Notes: generated from the sequence alone by a model not told the origin. Counted from the stretch's first letter, positions 638-40,101 are shown. The stretch: 64,000 nucleotides of DNA from Chlorokybus atmophyticus (GCA_009103225.1 RHPI01002630.1:1-64000), one strand, 5' to 3'. Made by a program: numbers and translations.

Positions 638-3600
638 ATGAATCATTACGGCCAGAACGCCGCAATAACAGCTGCGCAGCTGTTGTTGGCGTTGCTTGTA
701 AACTCCAGCATTGCGGCGTAGCTGGCCTAAGCTGGCGTTCACCTTGAATGCTACCTGTTGTCACGTTTGCTGGCGTACACTTTTTCTTGGAGTTTGCAGC
801 TGTAGACGGCCTGACTTCCATGGCGGCGAACATGTGGACAGCTGCAAATACTAGTCAGGCCATCGGTGCTTGCATGACGACATGCAAGCACCGATGGCCT
901 GACTACCACATGGTTATTAAGTTCATAAGCATCATTTGGATTACGATTCATACCCTCGTGTGCGCAGGCTGCATCGGCACCAGGCTGCCCATGCTGCTAC
1001 ACCGTGTTAGCCAGCCAGGGGCCTTATAACGTCATTGAAGGTGGACCCAACAGCTTCAAGGTATCCTTAGATGAGTTTCTGTGTGCCAATGCTTTCGAGA
1101 GCGCCACAACACCTGGGGACGTCACCACCGTGACACCCTTTGCTGGCGGTCAGCAGGTGCGTGGCCACACATGGGCAACGATCATGTCTTGCTATGCATT
1201 GCAGATTGGCTTTCATGATTAAGTCTGCAAGGCTGGCGGGTTAAAGGGCCAGAACATGTTGACATGCATGCTTAGGTGGTGATCCCCTGTCCAAATGCCG
1301 GTGCTGAAGCTGTTGCATACACCAACACCACGTGCCAGCGGTTGGGGGCAGCTTTGGATGCGGGCTGCCAATACGCCTCCGTGGCAATCTCCCCAAAAGC
1401 AGGGTGCAGCATCGATTCTGCAACAGGAACCTGCAGCTGCGCCCCGGCAGGTTCTGCTCCTCCCGCAGCAGCGCCAGTCAGCTCAACACCACCGCCATCG
1501 CCACCCACATTGTCACCGCCACCCTGCCGTATCTGCGGTGCGGGCCAGTGGCAATTGCGTTGTGTTTGGAAATATACAGTCTCCTTGCGTGAGAGGAAGG
1601 GAGGGGGCACGCCAGGCAGGGGGGGGCAACATGCTGTCATCTGTAGCGCAACCATATGTTCAACGAGCCAGTCCTTATGAAAGCAGCATGCATAACAGCA
1701 ACAACCGCAGCGTGGACATGTGTTTACACTGCTACTTGTACCACATTGTGGTCGTCGTTACATTGAGTGCTTGCCGCAGCTGTACACGATGTGTGCGCAA
1801 TGTGTTGAGGGACTCTGACTAGCCATTACGCAGGTGGGAAACTTGCTGGCGTTATCATTGGCAGCGTTGTCGGAGGGTGCTTGGTCGTTTGGCTCTGTTA
1901 TTGGCTCTGGCTCCACGGAAAGAGCCTGCAAACGTGCTGCTACTCTGGAGGTACTCACATGGCAGAGCAACCTTGTTATGCTGCAATCACTAGGCTAAGC
2001 ATTTGTAATTGATCGATTCTAAACTGCGTTTGTGGTGCTGCTTGCAATCTCAAGTAAACGCTCCCTAGCGTAGTGTTCTTTGAATCATTGGATTAGAAGC
2101 GAACTGCATTAGAACCAGCCACCTGTTGTATCATTATTTCCGTGGTGCTGCACGCAGGTTATGGTACGCCATCGCGTACGGCAAACGGTGATCACAATGG
2201 GGCTAAGCGTACTAGTAGCACCACAACCAATGCACCTGCAGCCATTGCGAGTGTGGCAAAAAGCAAAAACCAGCCTGGTCTTGAATTGATCGCCATGCAT
2301 GCATCGTCGGGGCCAGCAGGTGAGCCGCACTGCGCCATTATGCTGCACGTGTTGCACGTGTACACACAACACCTGGGGCAAATTGTGAGGCTTTTCAAAG
2401 TGAAGGATGCCTGCGCTGTACAAGTCAATTGCAACAGGCTGTTGTCTACTGTTGACTGGAATCAGCTCAAACCAGCAGTCAGGCATCAATGCAGATGGGA
2501 CTAAGCCTTCTAGTAGCACCACAACCGATGCGGCTGTATCCATTGCAGGTGCGAGAGAAGCAAAGAACCAGCCTGATGGTCTTGAACTATTGGTCCCGCA
2601 TGTGTCACCGGCGAACCACACGTATCTCAATCCGGCCACTCCTAACAATGCTGCTATTGCGTGAGTTCAACTACAGCTTTCCTTGCAATGCATGCAGAGC
2701 AATCCTGTTGCGACATATGCTGCACCGTGCTTGTACCATGTTGCATGTGCTGTGGCAAGTAGGCGGCACGAACAAGAGGCAACAGGGGCGCTGTCTGCGA
2801 CGCCAGCAGCAAGATTGACAGTGTTTATCAGCTACTGCCAGTTCGACAAGCATCACGCAGAGCGCGTGCGGAGACTTGCCGAGCAACTGCAACGAGACAA
2901 CATATACGTCATTGTGGACTACAAGAATAAGTACCAGTCATGGCCGGCTTTTGTTGGGCAGATGCTGAACGATGGCACCAAGGTACTGCTTGTCACGTCA
3001 ATCTAGTAGTGAACACCTTGCGCATGGTCGCTGTCGTCAACAATCCCCAACCTCTGGCAGCTTATGCAGTAAGCAGGCACATCTGCATGACAGCAATGCA
3101 TTGTGATCGGTTTGCTGATTACTCGTAGTACTTCAGGTGATCGTTGCCTGTGATGAGCATTATGAACGGTACTCATTAAAAGAGCCAACCGCAGCTGATG
3201 AGGTGGGAGCGGGAACGCACGACGAGTATACGAACATACTGAACAGGGTTTATGAGGAGCAGAATCTCTCTGGGTGGTTGGTTCCAGTCATCTTCCGGCC
3301 TCCCGGAAACAGAAACCACGTACCTGCGCAGATTCGGAAGTTCAACTACTACACCCTTGTCAATGAGCAGGCAAGTTCACAGAGTGTAGTGCATTTGCTC
3401 CAAGCTGCACATATTATTACAAGGACTTGCAGCATGCGCCTACTCACATTAGCAATACTTGACTGCGCGTTTGTATCAACATGGGCCGCATGGTTTTGTC
3501 TTCATCAGAATACCTGGGTTGGTTATCAAACCCTCGTTGAGCGCTTGGGAAGTGTTCCGGCCTTCGCGCACCCCTTGTCTCATAGGTATGCGTTTCGGCC

Positions 3601-4339
3601 GGTTTTGCAATTGACGTGCAGTGACCTACCACATGACCTACCACATGACACATGTACGCTCAGTGCATTTTCTATTTGCAGTCCCCCAGACCCATCAAGA
3701 GCGGGCGTTGTTGGCATCACTGGAGCAGCATCACCGGAGCAGCGGACACTTGAGACAAAGCTTACAGACCAGTGGCTCAAGGAGATACAAGATCCCATGG
3801 ACACAATAGCAGACTTCACGGAAACCTCTGCAGACCATTACGCCAAATTCAGAGCGTATCGCGGTGGTGATGACAGCCCGCAAGCAGAGCGCTTGAAAAA
3901 GATCGAGCGCGCACGCAGGTTAGACGACATGCATATGCATTGCACTTGCATGTTGAGTGCAATTGCAAGCTTGCTGTAAGTACTGATATGTTGCTCGCAC
4001 CAACCTGACAGGGTTTTACAAGACTTCTGGCGGACAGCTTACAAATACTACATGGATGGCATGTTGCCTCCTGACTTTTTCAGCAAATCCAATGTGTGGT
4101 GTGAGCGAGGCAACCATTTTCGGCTGTTGGTTGAGCCGTTTCACATTGCCAACTATTATCGGCAAGAGCTGTGGAAGCAGTGGCCTGTTGGCAATCGACA
4201 TTACCTTGAGGCAGACAATCGGCCAGAGTACTACACGTTTTTGGAGCTGCTATACGAGGAACATTATAAGACTGCACCGCCGTCGTCCACAGAACATGCG
4301 TTGCAGGAAATGGATGCCATTGAAGCAAACTTATGTTGA
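638..4339 (+). CDS. Predicted single-pass membrane protein: signal peptide, Cys-rich ectodomain, Pro-rich stalk, TM, SEFIR (TIR-like) domain, EDS1-type EP domain (~674 aa, 11 exons)
   Basis: Manual splice model: 638-717, 1015-1156, 1276-1537, 1834-1950, 2158-2319, 2495-2660, 2763-2982, 3137-3370, 3509-3585, 3682-3918, 4012-4339. Total 2025 nt, all junction phases consistent, no internal stop. Exon 1 (MNHYGQNAAITAAQLLLALLVNSSIAA) has a weak donor, and the exon 3 donor is uncertain. Exons 4-11 are well supported by motifs. Confidence 0.78.
1834..1950 (+). other. Transmembrane-helix exon of the receptor-like gene
   Basis: Translates GGKLAGVIIGSVVGGCLVVWLCYWLWLHGKSLQ, a typical type-I membrane anchor. 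Flanked by cag (1831-1833) and gt (1951), phase 1 on both sides. Too short for the ORF track. Confidence 0.8.
2821..3570 (+). other. SEFIR/TIR-like domain (exons 7-9)
   Basis: VFISYCQFDKHHAERVRRLAEQLQRDNIYVIVD matches the SEFIR N-terminal consensus (VFISYS...H...V..LA..L...GIDVILD). It is followed by K|VIVACDE, GAGTHDEY..I, LVPVIF and the C-terminal GYQTLVERL..VP. Confidence 0.85.
3371..3508 (+). other. GC-AG intron
   Basis: Donor cag|GCAAGT and acceptor ttcatcag. Removing 138 nt joins SEFIR NEQ to NTWVGYQTLVERL. The GC donor is conserved (cag|GCAAGC) in the paralog at ~24940. Confidence 0.7.
3820..4270 (+). other. EDS1-family EP domain (exons 10-11)
   Basis: After removing intron 3919-4011: HYAKFR...ERARRVLQDFWRTAYKYYMDGMLPPDFFSKSNVWCERGNHFRLLVEPFHIANYYR...HYLEADNRPEYYTFLELLYEEH. 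This is colinear with the EDS1/PAD4/SAG101 EP motifs YYDSFK, R.ELAGFW, LP.DF, W...YRRLVEPLDIANYYR and Y...GRP.RY. Confidence 0.9.
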
Positions 4340-7300
4340 TGTGCATGTTGAAGGCCTCTTAGATGTTTGCTTTGTTGTCGAGCACAGTTCTTATGGCCAT
4401 CACCAATGTAGATATATCGCCAAAGCTACCTTCCTCTCGTGTGATGTCAGCACCAGATGGCAAGTTGGCCGCAACACGCACGGTGCGCTATACCTTCTGC
4501 TGCTGTTTTAAGCTTTGAGCCTGGGTTGCGCAGTGTTTGCTGCTGCTACACGATAAGCTTGCTTGGGCAAAGCTGTTCCCAACCAGTCACTTGATTGTGA
4601 TGTACCACGTCAATGACGTGGTTTTGCAATGGAGCAAGCTGCAGCCAGTGTGGCAAGTGCTGATGACTGCAGCTAATTCAACAATCAGGTAGGTTTGGTA
4701 CTGGCTCAGTACCAAACCTACCTGTGTTACTGAGCCATCATCATACCTGCAGATGAGGCACCAGGACTCATGGATCCTCGTGACGCTGAGGTCTGCAGCT
4801 GCAGGTACGAGTGGCTCAACAAAACTGAAACTAGCAGTAACTGGAAGTAGCATTGACGCGCCAAGAAGTGACTAGCCCTCGTGATATAACTTTCGCACGA
4901 AGCTGTCATGTCACTGCTTGCATTCATGATCAAGACACGCTGCTGACAACATGGTAGCAGCCAGCTCGTTGCTGTCATGTTCTCCATTGCAATCATGACA
5001 ACCCTGCATTCCGCGGCCAGCATACAAATTTTGCGTGTCTTCCATGCTGCGTACGGGCATCTGCAACACGTCCTATTGCAGGTGACTGGTAGGTGCTGGC
5101 TGGCATGCACCTGCCTCGCGTCTGCCACTACTTGCTCAACATTGGTTTTTACAAACGCTTTTGCACCGTTGATGTGGGCTGGATGCAGAAATTGACAACG
5201 CAGTTGTATGCAGCATGAGTGGTCGCAAAGTGATAGTACAAAGCGCCGTAGAATGTGATTCGGTTTGTAAGTGCGTGCGCGTGCGCGCGCGCAGACACGT
5301 GTGCGCGTCAATGTACATGCATGTAGACCACACAACAACAACAGCAGCAGCAGCAGCGGACACTACATGTCGCCGTCCACCATTGCATCATCATCTGTTG
5401 CAGCAATTGTGTGACGAAGGGCATGTACCATTGGCTTGATAATAGTTATGGATGTGACAGATCAGTAGCACTCATAACAGGTATACCAATTACGGACAAG
5501 TACAAGTTGTCCGATCAGAGTGCAGTGTCGCTTTCTAACCGTCAACAACATATCCTCGCTGCTTCAACATGAAGCATGCACGTTGTCATTGTTGACTGGT
5601 TGGAGTGGACATGTTGGTGACACATCCACAAACCATCACTCTCCTCTGCGACTTACCACCTACAATGGTCAGTAACTTACTGAAGTTAATGCACATTATG
5701 CTAGTGTTTGGGGATGATGCAATGGTTGCTACATTTGTGGGCTTATTAACCTACTTTGCTAGTTTGCGACAACCCTTCCAATTGCACTTGCACACATGAG
5801 TCATGTGTCCACGAATGTGTCAGAACGATCGTCTGCGAGTCATCGACAAAGGTCATCAACACCAATAACAACAACAACGTTGCGTACATGTCACAATGCT
5901 GTGCTGGCTGGAGTAGAATCACAATAGCGACAGCGACGATGACTGAATCACTAATCTAGCCAGCCGTCAACCCACATTATCACTCTTGTCACCAACATTG
6001 CGACCATGTACCTGGGCTGACACGATCCGTGGCCCACCCGCACGAGCACGCTCGCTTGCGTCTACCTCATCACGCATGAACCTGCGTGAGGCGTGCAGCT
6101 CCAACCCCCTTTGTCGTGCACACGTGATGTGCAGCTATTAATGAACGCTGGTAATGAATGCTGTTACCAAAGTACACATAGTATGTCATGTAGATAACAC
6201 GCACTCGCATATGCACAATTTGTTCTGATGCGGTGGGTAGAAGAGACTCCCAAACCATACAAGTGGCACAATGTTAGGCGGTAGCGCATACAAGTGCAAG
6301 GTGTTCAGGTTAATATCAGTAACCGTCGCATTCACCGCAAACAAGGGGCGCCTAGACAAAGCATGGGGTTGCATCTGGTTTATTATTATTGAGAGTCGGC
6401 TTGGAGTTACTGTCTGCTTGACATTCGGCTGCTTGACATTGGGCTGCCAGTGTGCATGCAGGCAGGTGCGCTTGTGTGTAAGAGCGCGCACGAGTGTGCG
6501 TGTGGATTTTAGCATGAGAGACAGCACGAGAGCAGGATGCAGCGGTGCGCATGCACGAGAACGAAGTAAGATTGGGGAGGGGGGAAGGAAACAGGAAACG
6601 GGGAGAGAAGAAATGATGGTAGGGGCGGGGGAGAGAGGCAGAAAGAGAGTTCGGACGACAGCAGGTTGACTTCTACTAAGGAAAACAGCAACCTTACTTA
6701 CAAAGGAAACAGCAACAATGGTTGCTATACACCCAGCCTTTCACCACTGCCTCCGCCTCCTCCTCATGCGCTGCCGCCGCCGCCACCAAAACCCTGCCTC
6801 GCTACCGGCCGGTGATGCAAGATTGAAGCGATTGAGACTCATCACCAGCTTGTCCTTGTGGGCGTGGGCGGCGGCAGCATCGTCGTCTTCATCGCCGTGC
6901 AGGCGTCATCATCGCCTGTTGGGTGGCTGCCTCCAGCTCGGACATACCAACACACAGGTTGGTCTCCCACTCCGTCGCCTCTCCTGGGCGAATCATCATG
7001 CTCTCGATCCTACACTTGCAAGCATCAAGCAAGCATACAGCTGCCTGTTTGGGTGTGGTTGAGCATGTGCGCATGTGAAGTGAGCGTGTCGAGAATGCGT
7101 AACCGCGTGCAAGTTTTTGTGTGAGTACGAGCGAATGTGATTATGCGCAAGTGTAAGTGCAATAAGAGCAAGATTACACGTCTGCGACTATGCGGTTGAA
7201 GAACATGTGAACATGTATGTGCGAGACTGCATGTGTGGATGAGTGGTAGTGCTTCAGTTTGGTTCAGTGGCTGTGCGTGTGTAGATTGTAGGGTTCAGCC

Positions 7301-8907
7301 TTTGTCGACACATGCAGAGTGTGTGAGTGTCGTGCTGTTTACCTTTGTCCGCTGCCCAACAACCATATCCGCATGCAGTTGACAGCACCCTTGCAAGTAC
7401 CATGCTTAGTGTTGTATTTGCTTTGTGAGTGTAGCCTGTCTCAGCAATGTACCCAATTTGCTTGCTCATGCATGGACGCAGTATGCCCAGTAAGCCATCC
7501 AACCATTGTTTTCTTTACAAGGGCAGCGCGGAGAGAGCCGCAGTGATATATGCCGCAGTGATACAAAACTTGCAGCACTCAGCATTGACTGAAACAGCGT
7601 TCTCGGCGCTGTCTCATGCGCTCGGAGCGTAGTTGTTTTTGTATCTCTTCGCTGATCACACTGCCTGCACCAACAAAGCCTACACCAAGAGGACTGGCTA
7701 GTATGTAAGTCTGAAGGGCCAATGCAGCATGCACTGAGTGCTATGCACGCGTTCGTCACGCACATGAGCTTGCACGCCACAGCATACCATTCCCATAATC
7801 AACCATTTTCACACATGCTTTACCACCGGGTTCTACCTCCACTACTCTACACTACACCTGCTCCCACCTCACCCTGTTGGCCATGCACGCATGTATGCAT
7901 GGTCGTTACCATGCCATACCACGGTTGTCGCCTCAGTGTCGACCCACATGCGCTGAAACCACAAGCAGACGACCAGCAGACTCCCCCTCGCCGCCGCTCC
8001 CGCTCCCGCACCCTCCACCACCAACAGCCGTTGCCGTCTCCAGTGCTGAAGCTCTGAAGTTTCGTTAGCTGTCATGCAGCATGCACGGTTACCATGACCA
8101 ACAGGATGCATGCGCTGCACTCCCTTCATGATGGCGGCCATGTGTGCTTCACCATGATGACACGGGCAGACGCTCTGCTCTCCATGTACTTGCTATGCGC
8201 TGTAGTGCGTTGTCTTCGTCACTGCCATGCATGGCTCATAGGGCGGGCTTCCACACACAACCGATGCATCTACGCACCAACGCATGCAAGGTGCCCCCGG
8301 TCTGGCACCTACTGATATGCTACATAATGCAACAGCATGCAAACCATGCACGCGCTACTCGCTGCCACAGTACGCATAGCCTCGCCTGGCAGCGACTATC
8401 ACTACAAAATCAGGGCGGTATTCAGACGTTGCGAAATCAGCTGTAAGTAGCTTACAATCAGTCACAAAGGTCTCCTACCACTACGTCTTAAAATGTCAGT
8501 CCTAATGTCAGACGTTTGCACCTGACAGTCATGCTTTACACTAGCTCCTCACCGTTGATACCAGTGCTGAAAGTCAGCGTTTTGTGACTGACTGTCATGC
8601 ACTTCGTAATGCTGGAATTCAGTCATTGTGACTTGAATTTGTGTTATGCATTGCACACATGCAACGGCTTGCATTCGCACTTGAAGTGCTGGCATTCAGC
8701 AGCCCAACATGTACAAGCAATGCACTTGTATTTATACTTGCATTGCTGCTAATCAGCACCCAATGTTTGAACGCAGCAACTGCACCACCAAGTGCTATTC
8801 ACGAACGCTACGACTCAAGTGCTGGTGATCAGATTTTGAGCGCTAACTACAAGGATGTATCAGGTAGCTATCAAGCCGCTACACGTAACCGGCTAGTCAA
8901 GAACTGT

Positions 8908-10613
8908 TAGACGTTCATGCGCGTCACCGGCCTGCGCGCACGGGGCCCCGCCTTCTGCACCACCTTGGCCTTGCTGCAAAAGCCATTTTCGCACTCCGCG
9001 CAGCCCTGACCATCACACGCTTTGTGGCGCACCATGTCAACCGGTGCTGCGGTGCACAAACTGTTGGTGAACATCTTGGCGCATAATTAACACACATACA
9101 GCTTCAAGCAATTTTGTCTTAACTTACCAATGCATGCTTCCGGCCATGCGATGCGGGATCCTATCTCCACATCCTTGATCTTTGTCCACGAGTTGGTCTT
9201 GATGGGCAGATTGGCATTGCCCTGCAGCGCCTCATCAAACCACACTGCAATCTCACCTAGTGGACAAACAATTCTCAACATCAACTTAGTGATAAGCCAA
9301 TACCCACCCACCCACGCATGCACGCACGTGTGTGCGCGTACACGCACGAACAGCCTGTTCTGAGACGCTACCTGTCTGCAGCACGTGGTTGTGGACATTA
9401 CCACTCCCCTCAGTGCAGCACCGCGCCTTACCCACTGGCTTTGCACCTCGGCTCAACCACAGGTGCACTTGTGAAAATGACTGATCGTTCTCCTTGTCAC
9501 CAGTCCGCTGAGCTTGTCCGATCACCTGTGATTACCAACACCGTGTGAATGTACAGAGTGCGTGCTGAGTTGTGACGTTCTCTAACTTACATCAAGAAGC
9601 TGGTCGTCCAAGGAGATGTCCGTTGCTTGGCTACATGCAACGGGTTGAGACCCTGGGCAGCTGCTTGCCGCGGCACTCTTGTTCAACTGTTCCTGCAATG
9701 GGACCCTTGCTGGTTTTTGAGTCGGTTNNNNNNNNNNCTCTCCAAGCCTCGTCTTTGTGCTCATCAAGCTGCCCAGCTTCATGGTGCTCACTAGATGTTA
9801 CCGTCGGTGCTGCATATGGCAAACCATTGGTGAGCGAAGCATGCTGTAGCTGCGGATAAGCATGTACATCAACTTGACAATGTTGTTGCTGCTTGCTACT
9901 TCAAGTAGCAAGCAGCAACAACATGTCACTCTTGTGACCGTCGGTGTTGCGAATTTCAAAGCATTGGTGAGCAAAGCATGCTGTAGCTGCGGATTGGCAT
10001 GTACAGGAACGCATCAACTTGACAATGTTGTTGATGCTTACTACTTGAAGTAGCAAGCAACATTGTCACTCTTATGACTGATAGTGTAGGCAGCAAACAG
10101 TGCAAGAAGCATACAATCGGTACCAATGGACAAAGCTAGCAAGCAACTCCACCAAGTTAGCTACATGTACAAGGTTAGCTATGCACACTGGTGGCACCAA
10201 CAGACCCAAGCTAGCTAGCACTTAACCAACAACATTAGTGTCGGGCAGTTACTGCTTAGTAAGCAGTCACTTGATGGTTAACACTGTGTTCAGCGGTTAG
10301 TGCTCAAGATCAGCAGGCTGCTTGGATAATGCACTGCAATCTTGCCTGACATTGCTGAGCATGAAGCCTAGGCCTGTTCACCTGTTTCGTGACGAGTGAC
10401 TGGAGCAACACGGTGCGAGGAGCTTGCAGGCTGCTGCTCGGCACGTTGTCGCTCAGCTAGCTGTGCGTTTAGCTGAAGCACTTGCGCAGCTTGCTTTCTC
10501 CTTCTCTCATCTTCTGCTGCAATCACTCGTCTGGCCTCCTCTACTTTTTCAGGGCTGATTGCCTGAAACTCTGACAGACTGTTCAGCACAAATCTGGCTA
10601 GCACTAACTGCAT
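8908..10613 (-). CDS. CACTA accessory (TnpA-like) gene, partial multi-exon model
   Basis: Exon IAVWFDEALQGNANLPIKTNSWTKIKDVEIGSRIAWP (~9270-9129) resembles Tnp1/En-Spm accessory domains (V.VDE...LP...I.DA.GS.IAWP). Coiled-coil exon EKVEEARRVIAAEDERRRKQ (10368-10613). Candidate last exon with CDGQGCAECENGFC. Exon structure incomplete, and a 10-N gap lies inside. Confidence 0.55.
9800..10080. repeat. Two diverged tandem copies of a ~135-140 bp unit inside the CACTA element
   Basis: accgtcggtg...cattggtgagc.aagcatgctgtagctgcggat...catcaacttgacaatgttgttg..gct...tac ttc/gaagtagcaagca...tgtcactctt occurs twice in succession. Confidence 0.8.
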
Positions 10614-14700: not shown

Positions 14701-16490
14701 CGCGCACAAGCAACCGCACACAGTCGTGCGCACAGCCAATGTGCCGTAGAGCTCCTGCAAGTGTGACTTCTCTTACATTGCAGGCACAATTTTGCTTCCA
14801 GCAGTCATATCGCAAAAGCTACAACCCCGTCAAAGAACTACTCTAGTGAAGTTATGCGATGCCTTATCCATTGTCGGTTCACCGTGGGTCTCTAAACAGA
14901 AGCAGGATCTAGATGAGTTGGAAGTGGAGTTGGTGGAGGCATTGTGTTTGTTAGAGAGAGACTTCCCTCGCGGCATCTTCAACATCTCCATGCACCTGCT
15001 GCTGCACTCAATGCAACAGTTCCGCAAACTTGGTCCTGTACGAGGCACCTGGATGTTTGGAGCTGAGCGACGAATGCAAGATATACGCCAGCAGGTATGC
15101 AGTTGTTGAGGCTACTTCAAGCCAATGGTTAGTCTAGTACCTTCTTGAGTTCAACACATTGTGTGCAGGCAACGAGTCGGAAAGACCCCGAAGCAAGCAT
15201 TGTGATGTCCATAGAGTTGGAAGAGATTTTGTTGTGTTGCAGTAGCGCCATGAAGCAGATATGGCCATCTGCCGGAGTCCGACTGTTTGACAGATCTGAT
15301 GTTATGCCTATTCCCCTCGGCACCAAACGCAAGTGGCGCTTAAGTGAGCGTCACAGGCAGCTCATCAACCTTTATGTGCGCAACAACTTCCCCGAAGTTG
15401 GAGACTTACACAAGTGAGTGCGAAGTGTGATCAACTCAGGGGTTAACCATGTTTGGCATGTACAGGTGTGTGGCAAAACCTAAGACTGTACATGTATGTT
15501 GCCAGGTTACTGGATGAAGTGAATAGACTGCGTATACAGAGTCAAGTCAAGCAGCGCGATAGGCACGGCAAGCACTTGCGCAATGGGTCTGAAAAGGATG
15601 ATATTGATGCTGCCACGATGTTGCAACAACAGCCGGATCTCTTGCACAAGTATAGCCCCAAGGCCTGTGCCATGTTCTTGGGTTGCCCGGCTGAGTGCAG
15701 CGCGTACTCACACATGACGGTTGAGGGCAAGCACTACAGGACAGCACATAAGGACAAAGACAAGGTAACTTTTGACTGTGGTGTGGAGGCGGGGTTTCAA
15801 TGCGAGTATGTAAGTCGCCGCAATGATAACCAACCTGTGCGAGCGATCCTACCTTTTTGGGGCGTTTTGCTCAACATATTCCACATAGAGTTTCTCGGTT
15901 CTGAGGTGAGAAGTGTTGCATGTATCTTCCAACCTTCACGTACATGGAACTTTGTGCTGAGGTGCGTTATTGATGCAGCTGTTACTTTGCCGCGTGAAGT
16001 GGTTCAAGAAGCAATTTAAAAACCAACAATCCTCAGTCACAGACACGGGGAGGTTCTGGGTGCATCGAAACCAGTTTTTCAAGGAGGAAGAGGAGCCCTA
16101 CATTGAGGCGGATCGCCTCACAGGGCAAGTGTTCTTTGCCATGCCGACTGTGGCAAACTGTGACAGGCTGATAGTGCTTGAGAAGGAGGTGGCCACGAGA
16201 GTGGCATTCATCAAGTCGGTGAGGCCTCGCATGGAGGATCCCTCTCCTCCTGCTGATGCGGAGGAGAGGCGCTCTTCAATGTCTGCTTGCGCACGTGATA
16301 AACTACTGCGACAAGCGCGCGAAGCCTTCAAGGTGGGAGATGCAGCAGCTGTCGGCGAAGGTGAAGAAGAGATGGAGGAGGACAGCGACACAGGTACATG
16401 GTTGAACGCCATGACTGGTTGGTTGTATAACCAATTACACACATGCATGTTTTGTGCATTCACACAAGTCATTGACACGCTTGACTAGTC
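11771..16490 (+). CDS. tnpD: CACTA transposase TnpD (Transposase_21/DUF4218/DUF4216-type), spliced
   Basis: Motifs FDVCVNDCVLF..CPQCNEPR, YHCMPLIPRIK, SIYDSPTW, RLGFSTDGVSPF, WPLTVFCYNIPPW, HDYPG, HRRCLPEGHAFR, DRMHC, MHLLLH, GTWMFGAERRM. Eight consecutive exons from ~12768 to 16391 join in frame at GT-AG sites. The ends of the gene are approximate. Confidence 0.9.
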
Positions 16491-17419
16491 ACAAGAGCTC
16501 ACAGGCAAACTAGCTGTCCGCTAATTAGGAGACGAACTTGACGACGACAGCACTTGAGTGGAGTCGTGTGGGCTGGTGTTGGTAGCGCTGCCAGTACATG
16601 CAGCGCATTGCGACAAGATACTGTCAACAGCAGGCCAGTTGATAGCAATAGCAAGGGCAAGGACAACATGTGTACTTGCAATCGAGCATCAACGAGTGAC
16701 TGATCATTGTTTGTTATGGGCCTTGTGCTGAAACTCACGCGCTCTGAATGCGCTTAATTCGCAATCACAACTTGCATTCAGTTGCTAGTTGTTAACAACT
16801 TACATTAGGCGTTCGTGCATCGAATGAATACTCACATTCAGCTGCGCAGCTGAATGTGAGTACCAAAAGTCTGATCTGAGTCAAGGCCAGGTGACAAGGT
16901 CAGTCCTTAGCATCTCAAGTTCAGCTGCGCCTTCAGTCTTTAATGTCTGACTGCTACCAATGTGCTGCAATTCAGTTCCGTTACGACTGAATGTCAGCTG
17001 CACACAGCTGAAATTCTGATGTCTGAAACAGGCAATATTTTTGTAGTGTATAGTCAGCCAATCATGCATCGCTTATCAGATAGCCTTACCCATCTAGGGA
17101 TAGCTGTGCAGCAATTGGTTGGTAGCCTATGCCAGGGGGTGATGTGGTTGCACACGCACCATTCCATGGATAGAGACTTGCCATCATGTATAGTGCACGA
17201 GTGTAGAGTACAGTGCTGCCAGACAATGACACACACATCATTTCCATAGCAGTTTGTGTGCCTTCATGTGAAGAGGATGGGACATCCTGGCCCACCCTGT
17301 TGGGGGTGTGACTTGACCGAAGTTGTACATGTGATACACTAAGAACCAGCCAGCGCCCTACACGTTCAGTGAGATCTCTGTCGAGACAGGCAGGCTCCGG
17401 ACAACTTTGAAAGAGGCCT

Positions 17420-18264
17420 CTTTACACACGCTGCCAATGTGCGGTTTTGCGCTGACCAATGTCCTTGGAGCAGCGGTTGCAGTACACCTCGTCCAACAAG
17501 AACTCTATCGCCGCCAACTGTGTTGTCAAGAGCTGTCGCTTTGTCGGGCCCGTCGAACCCCAGCTTTGCTTCAAACTCGCCAGCGCCCGTCTGTGCAGGG
17601 CTGTGGCCTTGCCGTAGTCGTGATCCTGATCAATAGCAACTGCTTTGCAGATCTTGAAAGCATAGCCAACATGACGAGCCTTGGCGACGGTGCAAGATGT
17701 GTTCGAAACTGCGCAAATTGCTCTGCTCCTTGCAGCGTGGGAAGGCTACACAGCCCTGGACCACCCACTGGTGACCAAGAGATGCGACTGCCATTGTAGT
17801 CAGAGCACCAAGCCTTGCCACGGGTGGTGTATTCAGCGATTGGGTGGGTCGCCTGACATATAGCCGTCACAGTCAGTACACCAGCAGGTGCTTAACACCA
17901 TAACCATCGCCTGCAGTGTCAGCAACATGTGTGTAGGTCGGTGTCTTTAAGTGGGTGCGCGTGCGTTGAGTGTCTGTGAGTGAAGTCATAGTCCACGCAC
18001 TGCCAGTTTACAGTACAAGGAATGCTGCCCTGTGCCAAGCGTGTGAGCTCAAGTGTGCCCATGTCAAGCATATAGGCACAAGGCTAGGTAGATGGGCGAG
18101 TCTTGATAGGAAATGTAGGGCGCACGCAAGGCGGTCTGGCGACCAAGATCAGCCGATGAGCAAGCCGGTTCGCAATTTGGGGAAGCTAGCTGTGGCTAGT
18201 TTGGGAAACAATGTACACTCCGACGCATGGTGGCCTGAGCTGAGCCAAGCTTCCCTCCCCCCCC

Positions 18265-18327
<63 letters not shown>

Positions 18328-18540
18328 NCATTGGTGCATTGATTATGATGATGATGGTGGGAGCTGCAGTAGGGGACCACGTTTGCCATTATGGCTCTGG
18401 CATAATGAACACCAGAGGGATCTGCTCCAAGGACAGCGGTCAGCGCTCGCCGTACAATAGCAGCGCTTGCATTGCCATATCCTGGAAGAGGCCATACCTT
18501 TCCCCAAACCTGCCTTCCATGACAGCGATCTGACTGAAAG
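17420..18540 (-). pseudogene. Possible degenerate TPR-repeat gene remnant
   Basis: Frameshifted fragments DYGKATALHRRALAS/EAKLGSTGP and AAIVRRALTAVLGAD resemble the kinesin-light-chain type TPR consensus (A..LY.RAL...E..LG..HP). No intact ORF. Confidence 0.3.
18253..18327. repeat. Poly-C (poly-G on minus) homopolymer tract ~70 nt next to an N
   Basis: Directly visible. Its length is unreliable. Confidence 0.95.
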
Positions 18541-18824
18541 CGTGCAGCGCTGGCTGTTAGTGTAACAACAACAGCTATTACTGTGCTTAGTTTCCACCCC
18601 AGAAAGGGTGAACAGGTTCATCACACATGATGTCCCATCCCCTTCACAATGTAATATTCAATGCATATAAGATGCTATGATGTTCTTGAGGTGTGCGTCT
18701 CACAACTTGTAACAAAACTTTACTCGACACTTGTATACTATACATGAAGGCAAGTCTCTGTTAACCCTATGCGCATGTGTGATCATGCACGTGCAAGTTG
18801 CATGGCGCAGCCGCATCACCCCTG

Positions 18825-19562
18825 TCACAGGCTACCAACCATTTGCCGCATAGCTATCCTTAGTTGGTTAAGGCTATCCTTCCAGCGAAGCATCATTGGC
18901 TGACGGTTGTCACTGCTGAGGCTGTGCGCCTCAGCCAGTTCCTTTGCTCTAGGTGGGACACGGGTGGGGTAAAGCTGCTTCCAAGCTTCATCAAGGGAGC
19001 TCTCCACCGTCTCATCTTTGCGATTGTACACTTGGCAGTACAACTCTTGCAGGAGGTAGTAGCGTCTTGGCCGGCTACAACTGGCGGCTGGGTGGCTGCG
19101 GAGGTAATGCGGGGGGTTCTGTCTCGTGGTATTATCGCGCCCGTACCATTTAGCAATATCGAAGGGCTCAACAGCTACGCGATAGTCGTTACCACGCTGT
19201 AGCCATGTGCTGTTCCTTGAAGACAGGAACCCAATAGGAAATGATCCGCTGTCATGAACATCTGTTACCCAGTCCCAAAACCCTGCGAGCAAGCGTCGGG
19301 CGTCTTCAACTTGCTGGATTTCAGCATCTGCAGGGGCTGTCCTTTTCCTGCCAACTCTGAAGCGAACATAACAATCTTGGTATTTGTCTCTGTAGCGAGA
19401 AACAATCGACATGGCCTGAATCATGTCTTTGGTGTACTGCGTGTTCAACTGAAACATCAACTGCAGCTTGCGGTCGCGGCGGCCAAACCACAGATTGATC
19501 AGCGAAAGAACTGTTCCGAGCGCACCTAATACAGCGCCGAGAATGCTGATTGAGTCCGCCAT
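18825..19562 (-). CDS. Intronless membrane-anchored EP-domain protein (245 aa)
   Basis: N-terminal hydrophobic helix SISILGAVLGALGTVLSLINLWF followed by RRDRK. Then EDARRLLAGFWDWVTDVHDSGSFPIGF...WLQRGNDYRVAVEPFDIAKWYG...HYLRSHP...RPRRYYLLQELY, the full set of EP motifs (LAGFWD, EPLDIA, RPRRY). ATG start, open frame. Confidence 0.88.
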   Translation of the reverse strand: MADSISILGAVLGALGTVLSLINLWFGRRDRKLQLMFQLNTQYTKDMIQAMSIVSRYRDKYQDCYVRFRVGRKRTAPADAEIQQVEDARRLLAGFWDWVTDVHDSGSFPIGFLSSRNSTWLQRGNDYRVAVEPFDIAKWYGRDNTTRQNPPHYLRSHPAASCSRPRRYYLLQELYCQVYNRKDETVESSLDEAWKQLYPTRVPPRAKELAEAHSLSSDNRQPMMLRWKDSLNQLRIAMRQMVGSL

Positions 19563-20949
19563 GCCGGATGGTGCAAATTGACACTGCAGCTCGCCCAGCG
19601 CTGCCCTGTACGGAGTTGGAATGGCTTAATGGCATGATGCGTCCATGCAAGCGAGTAGACTGTTCGTGTACACTCTGTGACATGATACACGCACAATGCA
19701 AACACATAACTAGTAAGCACAGCACAGAGTATGATAGTGTGTAAGGGTGCTGTCGACTGTAACAATGTCCAGAAATGGTTGTTGCCAAGCGGAATGGCCA
19801 CGAAAGGACACCCACGCAGTAGTAACATACCTGCATTTTTGAAAACGCTGCCCCCTTGGACATGATACAGACACAAACTTTAATGTAGATTCGGTCCTTA
19901 CCATTTAATCACACATGCAGTCCCGCGCATACATCTTTGCACGTGCTCCCTAACACACACGACTCTTTCTCTCACTGACACTTGCATGCAGTTCAACTAC
20001 ATGATGCATGTTCGCTAGCACACTCACCCCACACGCAGCGTCACCAATATACTTTTACCCCCCACACACACGCACATCCTCACTCTTACGCACTTAGACA
20101 GCAAGCTGGACTTGACACAAGCTTTCAAGGAGAAGCTCTAGAGTGGTCAACAGCTGGATGCTTGCAAGAATGAATGCATGCGTGCAAGTGTGGGGTAGAG
20201 AGCATGGAAAGCATGAAAGCACGACTGCGGAGCGGCGGAGCGGAGCGGCCAACCTGCGCTGCAGCGGTAGGTCCCAGGTGTAGAGGCAGCCAGCCGCCAG
20301 GCAGCGATGATGACCCCTACGACTGCACGGAAGACGACCAGGCTGCCGCCGCCCCCGGCCAGCATGTCCAGCTAAGACAACCCCACTTGCCTTGACTTCT
20401 TCCTGCCGAAAAGAGTTTGCTAAGCAAGAGGCATGCACCCTCCCTCTCGTAATAAGACTAGGAGCTAAGAGAATAGAGGGTGAGTCTACCCTCGAACATA
20501 AAAATGTTAGTGTTAGCTCAGCTAGTTTAGCTGAAGCACAAATCATCAATGTCACACATACAGGTCGCGACCGGCGAGGTCCGGTCGGGACCGACACGGG
20601 ACTGACATGTTCAGCCTACAATTGGCTGGGCGCGAATAGGTAGAAGCCGTTGGATTGGAGCATTAACTGATTTATGAAGTCCATGGGACATGTCCAGCAA
20701 CACGTGACATTTTCAGAAACAAATGTAAAGTGTTCACTGGAGAAATGCACAATGAGCATACCGGTATGTACAAGCGTGCAACCTAAATACAAGCAAACAC
20801 AAGTCAAACAACTCTGTGTCTGTATTGCAAAGGGAGGCCTTCACATTAGGATGGCTACTGTGCTATTTATGAAAAAAACAGTGTTAAATGTTATAGCTTG
20901 TTGAAGTACATGTATAGGCGGCGCCTACATGTAGTTGGTACGATCAGCT

Positions 20950-21100: not shown

Positions 21101-23989
21101 ACTTAGTAGCATAGTATATAAGACACTGTATACTGCTTAATACAGTGGGTCGCACATTGTCTCTATCGTTGGCGTGCTCGCTGCACTTGTCCTTAGTGTA
21201 TGCACACTTGTATGTAGGAGGCAAATACACACACACTAGGCGCATCACTAGTTCTCTACAAACAGTACAGTAGAAAGTATCAAAAAGCGGACTGTTTTGG
21301 CCACCAAGTTGCAAACTATGTGATAATGATGTATAGTCGTGCCATATATGGTTGCAAGCGGAATTTGAAGGCCTACACGAGAAAATTAATGTTGAGATTT
21401 ATGGATATATGGTGTAGCATACCCGGATTTTCAAAGTTGTACGAAAATTGCAGCACAGTAGCCTCAATGGGTAATCATGAAATAACTCATGCTATAAGCA
21501 TGTCATGGCTACCAACCTTGCAATAGCATTAATACATGCTAGCAAACACATGTTGTACTCGCTTGCGCACACATCATCACATTTGAAATGTTATTTAAGT
21601 GATAACACTATTGCACATGGCGCAGCCGCAGGCTGCATTCTTATAAGCATGTTTAAACGCCATGCTCGTGTGCCGATCATGCCAACGAGTAACTCTTCAT
21701 GAATGTCAACGTCATAAAGGATGCCTTCCCAAGAGTGTTTGATTTTTTGAGGTTTACATTTATGGTAGCATGTTATAGCAGTTGCATTAAAATAGTACTG
21801 AAATGCAGTATAGTTACCGGCCAGCCTGTATTAAGCAATTGCTCATAAGCTGAACCAAAGACAGAAAACATTGTTACGCCTTTTATACTAGCCTTAAAGC
21901 TGGTTTTCATATGCTGGTTTTGAGATTGATAGATACAAGTCCATATTAATTGGATTGACAACATAATCCACTTCGGCAAGATCAAAGCTTGGTGAGTAGG
22001 GGGTGCGTCACCTCTGCAGATTGCGTCATCAAAATCATCTACGTTTGTAATGCATATCGGCGTGAGTAAAGATGTTTCTTGGTGGGGCTCTAAATTACGA
22101 TGGTGGCACAAGTTCCGCACTGATATGCACATTACTGTTATTGCCAGTACATACTTGCGGGATTCAGGTTAAGGAGGAGGCGGAGAAGGATGAAATGGCG
22201 TTGATAGTATTGATTGCGTGCATGAGTTAGGCTTGCGAATTCGAATGGACGACAACCGCAAGGTTGAGCGCCGCCTACGAGGTGAACATGAATGGGCGGT
22301 TGGTGGGCTCGATGGGTTATTTATCTTATCAGAGTCGCGGCTGTGCTTAATTAACAAGTTTTATTGCGGTGTCAACTGCAGAGCGCGCACCGTACGTACT
22401 GGCATTCTTGGCATTCTCATCATGCGCGCATGTATGAAGCTGTGCTGAAGGTATTGACTCAATTCGGCAAATCTGTCTTAAAGTTCGAAGCTTTTCCGCT
22501 TCCATCCGTCTGTATATCACGACATCAGAATACATGAACCCAAGTCTAACGCATGCAACACGCGCTCATACAAATACACACGCGCACTACGCAACACAAT
22601 TTTGCAACCTCACCCCAACCCCTACCCACCCAACACACAGATTATTCCACACTATGTTACGGCGGGGGGTCCGGCCGTCCAAGCCATAAAAGACCATGGT
22701 GGTAATTATGGCTATTCTATTCTTATGAGGATTTATAGTTATTCAAGCCCCTTCCAGAGGGCTATCGTAACACACTAACACTTAACTATGCGCGCATATG
22801 GTTGTTGGACGGTTTGTTGACAAGCTTTGGGTTACCGCATACATGTGTACAAATTCATGATCTCAATGTGATTTATCTATTTTGTACATGCCTGCTAAAC
22901 ATGTCAAAGGTGACGGTGCGGTTATCGCAAAATTAATCGACCTGCTTTGATTTGCTACCCACAAGTGTACGTTTTGCAAAACTTAAGCTTATTGTTGCTT
23001 GCTTGTCGTTCAATGCATGTGCTTATTGACGGCGCGCAACTTATGAATCATAAAGACCTTCCATAATCAACATGTTACGCATTCAATGTGGACTTAATGT
23101 GCTCGCTGCAAGCTGTTAAAGTGGGTCGACTCTCTTTTGTATACAGACAAATCAACTTGTTGTGGCAACACAGGTGTTGCGTATCCACCGTTGATAAGCA
23201 TTGAAAAGTAACATTCGAGCAAAATGTGGTCGCATGTGACACTTATGGTTGCAGCCATAAGTAGTTGCATGTGCAACATGACTGTCAACTGAACAAGTTG
23301 TTGTACATTCTTGATGACGGCATCAGCTCAGGTTTTGTTGACCTCTACACGCTGATGAATCACTGAGTGACCCCGCCCCTTGCTATAGGGCTATGCCAAA
23401 ATAAGTACAACGACTGTTTAAAGCGTGATTGCAACATGCAGTATGCATGCAGCCTATTTAGATGCGAGCATTCTATTGGTCTCGTTTCTCCAGTCTTGTG
23501 GCTAGCTCATTGTGCTATGTCATTCCTCTAAAGATGAGCCGTATAGCCGTAACGCGGTTCAACGATGCTGCTTGTTCCGCGAAATGTGTGAGCAACGTCG
23601 ACGCTTTCAAGTGCAAAGAATGTAACAACAATGTTGCAATGTTTGTAACTATATGACTGCCAGCATGCATCAACTTTGATTGGCACGTGCTGCAGCAAAT
23701 GCATCATCTCTATGAATATTGTGATTGGTGGGATCGGCATATCAAGTACTGCATAATGCATGCACAAGACAACCACAACCAACATACAGAAACGCCTATG
23801 CCAAACAGTTTTAACAGCATACAAGAGAAAGGCAGCTTTGACAAGTGTTCGGTAGAATCCTTCAATGACATCAACATGATGATGCTCATAATTACTTTAA
23901 TCGACAAATTTAATTAATATATATCCTACCAAAGAGGCCTTGAACTTGCACAGCAGGTAAGGAGTTTGCTTCAGTAGCCTCCAACACAT

Positions 23990-25000
23990 GTTGTACAGAC
24001 GACAACGATACCAATGGAATCTTATCATGTTTCTTATACTGCAGCTCGAACACCGTGTAGTGCTTGGGTCGTTTTTTCACCCTGAGGTAATTTTAATTAC
24101 CAATAGGCCACTTTTTCCACAGTTCGAGCCGGTGGTAGTTGGCTATGTCAATCGGCTCAACCACAAGCCAAAACGTGATGCCTCTCGCACACAAGATATT
24201 GGACCTGCCGATAAAATCAGCAGGCAACATGCCAGCGACATGCCATTTGTATGCTGTACGCAAGAGATCCTATACAACCTTGTCATGTCAGGTTGGTGCG
24301 GAGATTTCATCAATAAGCATGCTTTTAATTGCACAAAATTTTAAATTGCAATGCATATGCATGTCGTGTCTTGCGTGCACTAAATCTTGTTAACCGCTCT
24401 GCTTGCGAGCTGTCATCATCGGCACGATATGCTTTGAGTTTGGCATAATTGTCCACAGAGGTCTGCACAAATGCTTGGATCAAGAGCTTCGCTATTGTGA
24501 TGTCCTCATTGTGCCACACATTGTCTGTCAACTCTATTTTGTGTTCTTACAACTCGGCGATATCAAACACATACACTCCCGTTGGCTCCGAATCGCTCCA
24601 AGCGTCAAGGCATTATGGCTACACGTGTCGTGTGATAAGACAAGCAGCCATTTGCATGGCAGATGCAAATTAACCTCCGCAATGCATAGCTAGCATGGCA
24701 TACCTATGTAAGAAGAGCTGCACGACGGCCGAAAGACTTCCCAAGCGCTCGACGAGGGTTGTATAATCAACCCCAGAGTTTTTATTGCATGAAGATGAAA
24801 TTAAACCCCGATGTAATCATCGCGCACAGATGTCATATAATGCTATATTGCTTTAACGCATGCTGCAAGCCCTTTCCACGACAGGTGTGCACAGCTTGGA
24901 GCCAATGCATTACCGTAATGCATTGCGTGAGGTGTGAGCTTGCCTGCTAACCTTCAAGGATGACGTAGTTGACTTTCGAAGCTGTGCAGCAGTCACAACG
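23990..25000 (-). pseudogene. Decayed paralog of the SEFIR-EP gene (homologs of the end of exon 8 through exon 11)
   Basis: Minus strand encodes GMLPADFIGRSNILCARGITFWLVVEPIDIANYHRLELWKKWPIGN*NYLRVKKRPKHY and NYAKLKAYRADDDSSQAERL. Nucleotide homology extends to exon 9 (accctcgtcgagcgcttgggaagt), the end of exon 8 and the intron sequences. In-frame stops (TAA 24095-24093, TAG ~24270) and loss of the exon-10 GT donor. Confidence 0.88.
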
Positions 25001-34146: not shown

Positions 34147-34159
34147 ACTCCTGCCACGG

Positions 34160-40076: not shown

Positions 40077-40101
40077 TCAAACATGCATACAATCGCAAGG
40101 C

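What the first reader, a model, noticed from the sequence alone, without database searches (positions are those of the whole stretch)
638..25000. Three EP-domain loci within 25 kb: candidate algal SEFIR-EP immune-like gene cluster
Seen: one intact SEFIR-EP receptor, one TM-EP gene and one decayed SEFIR-EP paralog, in a transposon-dense region. Without the 8.6-kb CACTA insertion, loci 1 and 2 would be convergent and only ~6 kb apart. Inference: clustering, mixed architectures and pseudogenisation resemble the birth-and-death evolution of immune receptor clusters, suggesting a previously undescribed pathogen- or damage-sensing pathway.
Basis: partly seen in the sequence, partly recalled or inferred. 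Interest (0 to 1): 0.8.

Follow-up and report, generated by a model that had tools for sequence, protein, structure and literature searches.

The report
Algal EDS1-type EP gene pair, duplicated
In the early-branching green alga Chlorokybus, a membrane receptor-like gene (SEFIR/TIR-like plus EDS1-type EP domain) and a small membrane-anchored EP gene sit in an old mirror-image duplication in which each copy lost one gene, so a domain held to be specific to seed-plant immunity exists here as a two-gene module that can now be tested.

Summary
The window is Chlorokybus atmophyticus (locus 2 = JGI Chrsp121S01800). "EP" is Pfam EDS1_EP, matched above threshold.

- **Locus 1** is an intact, spliced, transcribed 11-exon gene (CDS 253-4339, 668 aa). 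Its order is signal peptide, Cys-rich ectodomain, TM helix, SEFIR/TIR-like domain, EP.
- **Locus 2** (18825-19562, minus strand) is an intact TM+EP ORF. Its model matches only EDS1/PAD4/SAG101 among solved structures.
- **Locus 3** (about 23953-24990, minus strand) is a 5'-truncated SEFIR-EP copy with stops, frameshifts and lost splice sites.
- **A fourth copy**, a dead TM-EP relic, lies at 6847-8399 and 17052-17473. It is split by the 8649-bp CACTA element (8400-17048).

The N gap sits inside the CACTA. The CACTA's two flanks join into one sequence homologous to locus 2, so the scaffold join is sound.

The four copies form one diverged inverted duplication of a SEFIR-EP + TM-EP module, with one gene left intact per arm. 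The family has at least 12 other annotated Chlorokybus members. Gene numbering suggests further SEFIR-EP/TM-EP pairs on two scaffolds.

Immune function is inferred, not shown. The scan has already noted EP genes elsewhere in this genome (28 notes).

The parts
253..4339 (+). Locus 1: SEFIR-EP receptor-like gene, CDS of 11 exons (253-321, 968-1156, 1276-1537, 1834-1950, 2158-2319, 2549-2660, 2763-2982, 3137-3370, 3509-3585, 3682-3918, 4012-4339), 668 aa
   Evidence: Ten splice joints in transcriptome contigs of runs X1-X3 from two studies: nine GT..AG and one GC..AG. The first joint is seen in X2 only. The open frame is continuous, with a stop two codons upstream of the ATG.
253..321 (+). Exon 1: hydrophobic N-terminal signal peptide (residues 1-23)
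   Evidence: Hydropathy 1.7-1.8 over residues 1-23. The joint 321>968 is GT..AG and seen in run X2 only.
1834..1950 (+). Exon 4: transmembrane helix (residues about 177-200), following the Cys-rich ectodomain and Pro-rich stalk of exons 2-3
   Evidence: Kyte-Doolittle maximum of 2.36. No Pfam family was found for the ectodomain, and only a weak EGF-like lead came from the atlas.
2763..3370 (+). Exons 7-8: SEFIR/TIR-like domain (residues about 320-452; intron 2983-3136)
   Evidence: Exon 7 alone scores TIR_2 24.5 bits and SEFIR 20.7 bits, both just under threshold. Paralog P0005, 71% identical to locus 1, passes both (SEFIR 41, TIR_2 37.7). The best solved relative is bacterial SEFIR 5y8e, E 0.04.
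3682..4339 (+). Exons 10-11: EP domain of locus 1 (intron 3919-4011)
   Evidence: EDS1_EP at 36.8 bits. Motifs are EPFHIANYY and RPEYY.
6847..8399 (+). Dead TM-EP copy (relic), left part: copy of the locus-2 upstream exon and 5' region, and TM-helix codons with a TGA
   Evidence: Inverted homology to 20373-19505. A stop sits in the TM-helix codons and the interior is no longer alignable.
8400..17048 (+). CACTA/EnSpm transposon inserted in the relic's last coding stretch; TAT target duplication at 8397-8399 and 17049-17051
   Evidence: Termini and target duplication. Transposase_21 at 65 and 75 bits and DUF4218 at 47 bits.
9728..9737 (.). Assembly gap, inside the CACTA
   Evidence: Position. 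The flanks of the element join into one homologous sequence.
17052..17473 (+). Relic, right part: last 27 codons (59% identical to the locus-2 C-terminus, stop codon lost) plus a copy of the 3' flank
17474..18421 (.). Spacer at the centre of the inverted duplication (poly-G/C tracts, single N at 18328)
18825..19562 (-). Locus 2: intact TM-EP gene, 245 aa from the conserved MADS start (JGI Chrsp121S01800)
   Evidence: 100% match to P0001. EDS1_EP at 34.8 bits. TM hydropathy 2.12. AF2 pLDDT 85.6. The top 24 Foldseek PDB hits are only EDS1/PAD4/SAG101.
20255..20365 (-). Upstream exon used by the JGI model of locus 2 (adds 50 non-conserved residues); also copied in the relic
23953..24990 (-). Locus 3: 5'-truncated, decayed SEFIR-EP pseudogene
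   Evidence: Alignment to locus 1 with the list of defects. Long terminal branch of 0.64 in the EP tree.

Best explanation
The stretch is a diverged inverted (palindrome-like) duplication of a two-gene module from a Chlorokybus multigene family of lipase-less EDS1-type EP proteins. The order is: SEFIR-EP (locus 1, + strand), TM-EP relic (+), spacer, TM-EP (locus 2, - strand), SEFIR-EP relic (locus 3, - strand). Each arm kept one working gene. A CACTA transposon later landed in the dead TM-EP copy. These points are shown. The mechanism below is inferred. Locus 1 is a type-I membrane protein. Ligand-driven clustering of its ectodomain would bring its cytosolic SEFIR/TIR-like domains together, either to cleave NAD+ or make a nucleotide signal as bacterial SEFIR and TIR do, or simply to scaffold. 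The EP domains would read that event: the one fused to SEFIR, and the membrane-anchored locus-2 EP, which keeps the Arg equivalent to AtEDS1 R493. The two EP types possibly act as a heteromer, as EDS1 does with PAD4 or SAG101. I put the structural account at about 0.9 and the immune-type SEFIR-to-EP signalling account at about 0.3.
For: Organism and gene identity. EP homology comes from Pfam above threshold and from phmmer against the PDB, which hits only EDS1/PAD4/SAG101. It also comes from a profile search at E 6.5e-78 and from the fold. Locus 1 is spliced and transcribed in two studies. Seven inverted homology blocks are colinear from 3324/24989 in to 17473/18422, with E values down to 1e-112. 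One block bridges the CACTA excision site. Decay of locus 3 and of the relic. In the tree, a TM-EP clade (support 95/93) separates from a SEFIR-EP clade. Consecutive or near JGI gene numbers place one gene of each clade together on Chrsp103 (626/627) and Chrsp114 (1185/1191). The AtEDS1 R493 position is Arg in all 25 seed-plant rows and all 5 TM-EP proteins, but Tyr in the SEFIR-EP clade. R493 is needed for pRib-ADP-induced EDS1-PAD4 signalling (10.1101/2022.05.02.490369). Bacterial SEFIR depletes NAD+ in defence (10.1101/2024.02.11.579819). An uncultured eukaryote contig has a TM-EP gene between TIR-NB-ARC-LRR genes.
Against: No functional data exist: no challenge experiment, no NADase or ligand test, and no evidence that the locus-1 and locus-2 proteins touch. 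The complex prediction gave no verdict. Locus 1 has His at the nearly invariant Asp of EPxDIANYY and Tyr at the R493 position, so its EP may not bind nucleotides. Locus-3 homology stops inside the SEFIR exon, so that copy may never have been complete, which weakens 'reciprocal loss'. Adjacency of the other pairs rests on gene numbering only. Expression of locus 2 was not tested. No NLR lies in this window. The SEFIR assignment of locus 1 itself is sub-threshold, exon by exon.
Confidence: 0.55

Rival explanations
1. Signalling module unrelated to immunity. The EP-like helical domain is a general membrane-proximal scaffold or dimerisation domain, and the pair serves cell-surface signalling in development, adhesion or abiotic stress. 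The resemblance to EDS1 is ancestry only.
For: Only the N-terminal half of the Pfam EP profile is matched (positions 27-122 of 211). Identity to EDS1/PAD4 is 17-20%. Locus 1 lacks the R493-type Arg and the invariant Asp. The ectodomain is Cys-rich with a weak EGF-like lead. No NLR is nearby.
Against: The fusion partners across the family are all immune-type modules: SEFIR, TIR and LRR. A TM-EP gene lies between TNL genes in another alga-like contig. The RPxRY and EPxDIANYY ligand-pocket motifs are kept in the TM-EP clade. The copy-number turnover is typical of defence genes.
Confidence: 0.25
2. No module. The four copies arose by separate, transposon-driven fragment duplications in a repeat-rich region. 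Loci 1 and 2 are neighbours by accident and work independently.
For: The region is rich in repeats and holds a CACTA element. The 2.4-3.5 kb between the two homologous blocks of each arm do not align. Arm identity differs between blocks, from 65% to 92%. Locus 3 is no closer to locus 1 than to paralogs on other scaffolds.
Against: All seven blocks share one order and orientation around a single centre. The same two clades also appear to be neighbours on Chrsp103 and Chrsp114.
Confidence: 0.15
3. Assembly artefact. The palindrome or the linkage of loci 1 and 2 was created by a mis-join at the N gap or by a fold-back chimera.
For: A 10-N gap at 9728-9737 and a single N at 18328 lie between the loci. 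Elsewhere in the window, a 9.4-kb repeat at 99.7% identity flanks a 377-N gap.
Against: The arms are only 65-92% identical, so they are not collapsed or duplicated reads. The two CACTA ends carry the same TAT duplication, and their flanks rejoin into one sequence homologous to locus 2.
Confidence: 0.03

Closest known systems
EDS1-PAD4 and EDS1-SAG101 heterodimers of seed plants (EP domain, PF18117)
   Same: The EP domain is homologous by sequence, profile and predicted fold. The EPxDIANYY and RPxRY motifs are conserved. Locus 2 keeps the Arg at the AtEDS1 R493 position. There are two distinct EP paralog types, and the family is associated with TIR-type domains.
   Different: There is no lipase-like domain, so no LLIF helix interface. 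The proteins are membrane-anchored. In locus 1 the EP is fused directly to a SEFIR/TIR-like domain. The locus-1 EP is shorter and lacks the R493-type Arg. No RPW8-type helper NLR link is known, and ligand binding and dimerisation are untested.
Bacterial SEFIR anti-phage defence protein and animal IL-17R/Act1 SEFIR signalling
   Same: The domain is SEFIR-class STIR. The best solved relative is Bacillus cereus SEFIR 5y8e. As in IL-17R, the SEFIR sits on the cytosolic side of a single-pass receptor.
   Different: The C-terminal partner here is an EP domain, which is not found in bacteria or animals. NAD+ cleavage is unproven. The match of locus 1 itself is sub-threshold when scored exon by exon.
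Other Chlorokybus EP loci (Chrsp103, Chrsp114, Chrsp231, Chrsp5, Chrsp235, Chrsp249, Chrsp258) noted earlier by this scan
   Same: They belong to the same two EP clades, use the same fusion partners, show clustering and contain broken copies.
   Different: Only locus 1 was seen with a signal peptide plus a Cys-rich ectodomain. This locus has no TNL neighbour. The CACTA insertion here marks the dead copy.
Birth-and-death clusters of plant NLR/RLP immune receptors
   Same: Local paralogs, pseudogenes, transposon insertions and varied architectures.
   Different: There are only two live genes, and the cluster derives from one inverted duplication. Strain polymorphism, diversifying selection and immune function have not been shown.

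Membership tests
EDS1 family (EDS1/PAD4/SAG101) | N-terminal lipase-like (class-3 lipase, alpha/beta-hydrolase) domain | tested here: not met
   No Lipase_3 hit in any locus-1 exon or in locus 2. Locus 2 is TM+EP only. Locus 1 is signal peptide, ectodomain, TM, SEFIR and EP. Seed-plant hits do show Lipase_3.
EDS1 family (EDS1/PAD4/SAG101) | EP domain, Pfam PF18117, above the gathering score | tested here: met
   36.8 bits (locus 1 exon) and 34.8 bits (locus 2) against 23.1. Only profile positions 27-116 are covered.
EDS1 family (EDS1/PAD4/SAG101) | EP alpha-helical bundle fold | tested here: met
   Locus 2 AF2 model at pLDDT 85.6. Foldseek ranks 1-24 are all EDS1/PAD4/SAG101 at probability 0.99-1.00 and query-normalised TM-score (TMq) 0.47-0.58, and the next hit has probability 0.14 or less. 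The input alignment contained seed-plant EP domains. Locus 1 was not folded.
EDS1 family (EDS1/PAD4/SAG101) | Ligand-pocket Arg (AtEDS1 R493 in RPxRY) and the EPxDIANYY motif | tested here: inconclusive
   Locus 2 has EPFDIAKWY and RPRRY, so the Arg is kept. Locus 1 has EPFHIANYY and RPEYY, so both the Arg and the Asp are lost.
EDS1 family (EDS1/PAD4/SAG101) | Exclusive heterodimer of two EP-family paralogs | tested here: inconclusive
   Complex prediction on the locus-1 EP exons with locus 2 gave no verdict, and the partner's fold was uncertain.
EDS1 family (EDS1/PAD4/SAG101) | Binding of TIR-made nucleotides (pRib-AMP/ADP, ADPr-ATP) | not testable with these tools
   Needs biochemistry.
SEFIR domain (PF08357; STIR superfamily) | Profile match above the gathering score | tested here: inconclusive
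   Locus 1 exon 7 alone scores SEFIR 20.7 (<23) and TIR_2 24.5 (<28). Exon 8 alone gives no hit. The joined model was not sent. Paralogs P0005 (71% identical to locus 1) and P0154 (also SEFIR-EP clade) pass: SEFIR 41 and 38, TIR_2 37.7 and 35.8.
SEFIR domain (PF08357; STIR superfamily) | NAD+ cleavage or SEFIR-SEFIR association | not testable with these tools
   A Glu-rich CDEHYE stretch follows the third strand, as CDKDYCE does in 5y8e. No catalytic assignment was made.
CACTA/EnSpm DNA transposons | CACTA termini in inverted orientation, 3-bp target duplication, TNP2-type transposase | tested here: met
   CACTACAAAA at both ends with 21 of 30 bases matching, and TAT on both sides. PF02992 at 65.5 and 75.1 bits, and PF13960.
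Birth-and-death immune receptor cluster | Local paralogs with pseudogenes | tested here: met
   Two intact and two dead copies.
Birth-and-death immune receptor cluster | Strain polymorphism, diversifying selection, response to pathogens | not tested

The most novel reading that the evidence does not exclude
The SEFIR-EP receptor and the membrane-anchored TM-EP protein form a two-component, membrane-tethered maker-and-reader of NAD-derived signals. SEFIR makes the nucleotide. A heteromeric EP pocket, with its Arg supplied by the TM-EP partner, binds it. This would be a lipase-free relative or forerunner of TIR-to-EDS1 signalling, and would explain how TIR-type immunity is read out in lineages said to lack EDS1.
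Probability: 0.2. Interest if true: 0.9.

Novelty: new variant of a known kind. Interest (0 to 1): 0.72.

Why it matters
Plant immunity papers state that EDS1-family EP domains arose in seed plants, and that it is unknown how TIR signals are read in algae, bryophytes and ferns (PMC9806590, PMC10834447, PMC11218826, 10.64898/2026.05.20.726525). This locus gives an expressed algal gene that joins a SEFIR/TIR-like domain to an EP domain. Next to it is a membrane-anchored EP gene that keeps the key ligand-pocket arginine. The pair was duplicated as a unit, then reduced to one gene of each type. That makes a concrete, clonable two-protein system for testing whether EP domains read nucleotide signals outside seed plants. 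It also dates the EP domain to early green-lineage evolution. In passing, a trebouxiophyte protein with Lipase_3 plus EP was seen.

Tried and rejected
- Complex prediction with the two locus-1 EP exon products plus locus-2 residues 26-245 gave no verdict. The score was 0.00 and the alignments were not used. This is no evidence either way.
- The first AF2 run, with a 4-row alignment, was unusable at pLDDT 55. It was redone with 57 rows.
- The look-up of encoding contigs found no record for the 245-aa locus-2 product, so expression of locus 2 stays untested.
- The atlas search of the locus-1 ectodomain exon gave only scores below 0.8, with EGF-like leads. The ectodomain remains unassigned.
- Pfam on 16 ORFs of the intergenic stretches (4.7-8.1 kb, 20-26 kb) found nothing.
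- No terminal repeats define a transposon in 19.9-24.1 kb or 4.3-6.9 kb. 'Transposon-dense' is therefore shown only for the CACTA and for 29-64 kb.
- tblastn with an algal TIR-NB-ARC-LRR protein and a TIR_2-NB-ARC protein found no NLR in the window.
- Locus 3 as a recent copy of locus 1 is rejected. Its EP exon is 50% identical to locus 1 but 59-61% identical to P0005 and P0154, and the tree leaves the clade unresolved.
- The locus-1 protein was not found among annotated Chlat1 proteins.


Full report
**Identity and observation**

The window is eukaryotic, at about 50% GC. The 245-aa ORF at 18825-19562 (minus strand) is 100% identical to the Chlorokybus atmophyticus protein JGI Chlat1 Chrsp121S01800.

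- The locus-1 exon at 4052-4339 scores 36.8 bits and locus 2 scores 34.8 bits, against a gathering score of 23.1.
- tblastn of the locus-1 pieces finds the third copy on the minus strand at 24976-23967.
- ORFs at 13109-15109 carry Transposase_21 (tnp2) and DUF4218.
- The element runs from 8400 to 17048 (8649 bp). It has CACTACAAAA termini and a TAT target duplication.

**The gap**

The N runs are at 9728-9737, 18328 (one letter) and 48944-49320. The first lies inside the CACTA. When the element and one TAT are removed, 8340-8399 plus 17052-17160 align without a break to the reverse complement of 18800-18965. That target is the last codons and 3' flank of locus 2.

Both contigs on either side of the gap therefore belong to one insertion into one older sequence. 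The linkage of loci 1 and 2 does not depend on the gap. Only the element's length is uncertain.

**Locus 1 gene model**

Three runs hold about 57% of the words of 2600-4600. Their contigs skip ten introns in all, nine with GT..AG ends and one with GC..AG. They are therefore transcriptomes, and they come from two studies.

Joining the exons in a local script gives an open frame from an ATG at 253 to the stop at 4339, 668 aa long. There is a stop two codons upstream of the ATG. The domain order is:

| Residues | Feature |
|---|---|
| 1-23 | Signal peptide |
| after 23, to the stalk | Cys-rich ectodomain with no family match |
| before the TM helix | Pro-rich stalk |
| 177-200 | TM helix |
| between the TM helix and 320 | Two KNQPxGLEL repeats |
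| about 320-452 | SEFIR/TIR-like domain |
| about 505-668 | EP domain |

The first joint (321>968) is seen in one run only.

Scored exon by exon, the SEFIR and TIR_2 hits are just under threshold. The paralog P0005 is 71% identical to locus 1 over 395 residues and passes both. Its best solved relative is the Bacillus cereus SEFIR domain, at a marginal E of 0.04.

**Locus 2**

Three paralogs share the start MADSISILGAV... but have unrelated annotated N-terminal extensions. The JGI extension of locus 2 comes from an upstream exon at 20365-20255. Residues 4-26 form a TM helix.

- phmmer against all PDB sequences finds only EDS1, PAD4 and SAG101, with a best E of 1.6e-5.
- With a 57-row alignment, the AF2 model reaches pLDDT 85.6.
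- The first 24 Foldseek PDB matches are all EDS1/PAD4/SAG101 chains, at probability 0.99-1.00 and TMq 0.47-0.58. The next hit has probability 0.14 or less.
- The alignment included seed-plant EP domains, which may help the model toward that fold.

**Locus 3**

A base-level alignment to locus 1 shows that homology starts only at locus-1 position about 3324, near the end of the SEFIR exon. The defects are:

- a 1-nt deletion and a TAG in that first stretch;
- 1-nt and 2-nt deletions at the end of the exon-10 equivalent;
- loss of that exon's donor site;
- the next acceptor changed from CAG to CAA;
- TAA in place of an Arg codon in the EP core (WPIGN-stop-NYL).

Exons are 72-80% identical to locus 1 and the introns are similar. 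No ectodomain, TM or N-terminal SEFIR sequence exists anywhere else in the window. Locus 3 is a dead fragment, and it may have been truncated at birth.

**A fourth copy and the overall structure**

Inverted repeats link 17053-17473 with 18904-18422, and 6847-7638 with 20373-19505. The left partner is a dead copy of locus 2.

- It keeps a copy of the upstream exon.
- Its TM-helix codons carry a TGA.
- It keeps the last 29 codons at 59% identity, with the stop lost. These codons are split by the CACTA after the third one.
- Its middle 730 bp no longer align.

Together with the locus-1/locus-3 block (3324-4413 against 24989-23870, E 1e-112), seven blocks lie in one inverted, colinear order around a centre near 17950. 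The simplest reading is one inverted duplication of a SEFIR-EP + TM-EP module. The left arm kept SEFIR-EP and the right arm kept TM-EP.

Identity rises from 65-71% at the outer ends to 86-92% near the centre. I cannot explain this gradient.

**The family**

A profile search of 1.84 billion representatives gives 208 hits at E<=1e-3. With the word search and name look-ups, I count 12 annotated Chlorokybus EP proteins besides locus 1, on nine scaffolds. Their architectures are TM-EP, TM-SEFIR-EP, LRR-SEFIR-EP and EP-TIR-EP.

A maximum-likelihood tree separates two groups:

- a TM-EP clade with support 95/93, holding locus 2, P0002, P0003, P0006 and P0007;
- a shallow SEFIR-EP clade, holding loci 1 and 3, P0005, P0154, P0155, P0004, P0008 and P0127. 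Locus 3 sits on a long branch.

JGI gene numbers suggest one gene of each clade side by side on Chrsp103 (626/627) and close together on Chrsp114 (1185/1191). I could not check their DNA.

Outside Chlorokybus, EP-like proteins occur in the trebouxiophytes Elliptochloris, Myrmecia and Stichococcus, and in eukaryote-like metagenome contigs. On one of those contigs a TM-EP gene lies between TIR-NB-ARC-LRR genes.

**Residues**

Numbering from the AtEDS1 chain places H476, K478 and R493 in YHRHLK...RPTRY.

- In the 57-row alignment, the R493 column is Arg in all 25 seed-plant rows and all 5 TM-EP proteins. It is Tyr in the SEFIR-EP clade, and locus 1 reads RPEYY.
- R493 is needed for pRib-ADP-induced EDS1-PAD4 signalling.
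- Locus 1 also has His at the nearly invariant Asp of EPxDIANYY, whereas the dead locus 3 keeps the Asp.

**Mechanism**

All of this section is inferred. Bacterial SEFIR proteins defend by depleting NAD+, and seed-plant EP pairs bind TIR-made nucleotides. The most likely working model is a membrane-tethered maker-and-reader pair. It has not been tested, and the one complex prediction gave no verdict. The main rival is a non-immune signalling role.

**What is known**

Papers state that the EDS1 family and its EP domain are confined to seed plants. One 2026 preprint notes 'short EP-like sequences' in green algae without robust homology. UniRef already auto-labels a few algal proteins as EP-containing.

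This scan has flagged EP genes on other pieces of this genome, including an inverted block with reciprocal loss. The present report adds four things: the RNA-based locus-1 model, the fourth copy, the palindromic module structure, and the split of the R493-type Arg between the two clades.

**Limits**

The joined 668-aa model was used only in local scripts and was not sent to any search or folding tool. Expression of locus 2 and any strain comparison remain untested.

Noticed in passing
P0166 (Stichococcus sp. RCC1054, MMETSP1473, 790 aa) and P0170 (metagenome, 728 aa): Both carry Pfam Lipase_3 (78 bits) followed by EDS1_EP (33 bits). This is the lipase-plus-EP architecture of the EDS1 family in a chlorophyte alga, where the family is said to be absent. 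The low EP score argues against seed-plant contamination.
   Followed up: partly
L002:10001-10663 and neighbours (JGI metagenome 3300060284, contig of 64.9 kb): A 220-aa TM+EP protein lies between a TIR-NB-ARC-LRR gene (1019 aa) and a TIR_2-NB-ARC gene (567 aa) on a eukaryote-like contig.
   Followed up: partly
window 39513-48943 and 49321-58759: A 9.4-kb direct repeat at 99.7% identity is separated only by the 377-N gap at 48944-49320. It is either a very recent tandem duplication or an assembly artefact.
   Followed up: no
window 29234-34151 versus 47129-64000: Several 0.3-2 kb repeats at 94-97% identity show that the right half of the window is repeat- and transposon-rich.
   Followed up: no
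window 5630-5782 (- strand): A transcript contig of run X3 has a CT..AC joint at 5657/5753, which is a minus-strand GT..AG intron. It indicates an unannotated spliced transcript between locus 1 and the relic.
   Followed up: no
window 17545-17643 (- strand): The first 33 residues of the annotated paralog P0155 (Chrsp249S03837) match the palindrome spacer at 61% identity, E 6e-6. This may be a repeat shared by rearranged EP loci.
   Followed up: no
window 3324-4413/24989-23870 through 17172-17473/18759-18422: Arm-to-arm identity of the inverted duplication rises from about 65% at the outside to 86-92% near the centre. The middle of the dead TM-EP copy (7650-8370) does not align at all.
   Followed up: partly
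P0046 (CAM9723916.1) and P0020 (KAK9811796.1): An EP-like protein is filed under the brown alga Ascophyllum nodosum and may come from an associated green alga. The [Myrmecia] bisecta EP protein has a sub-threshold MLKL_N-like stretch (19.4 bits) before the EP.
   Followed up: no
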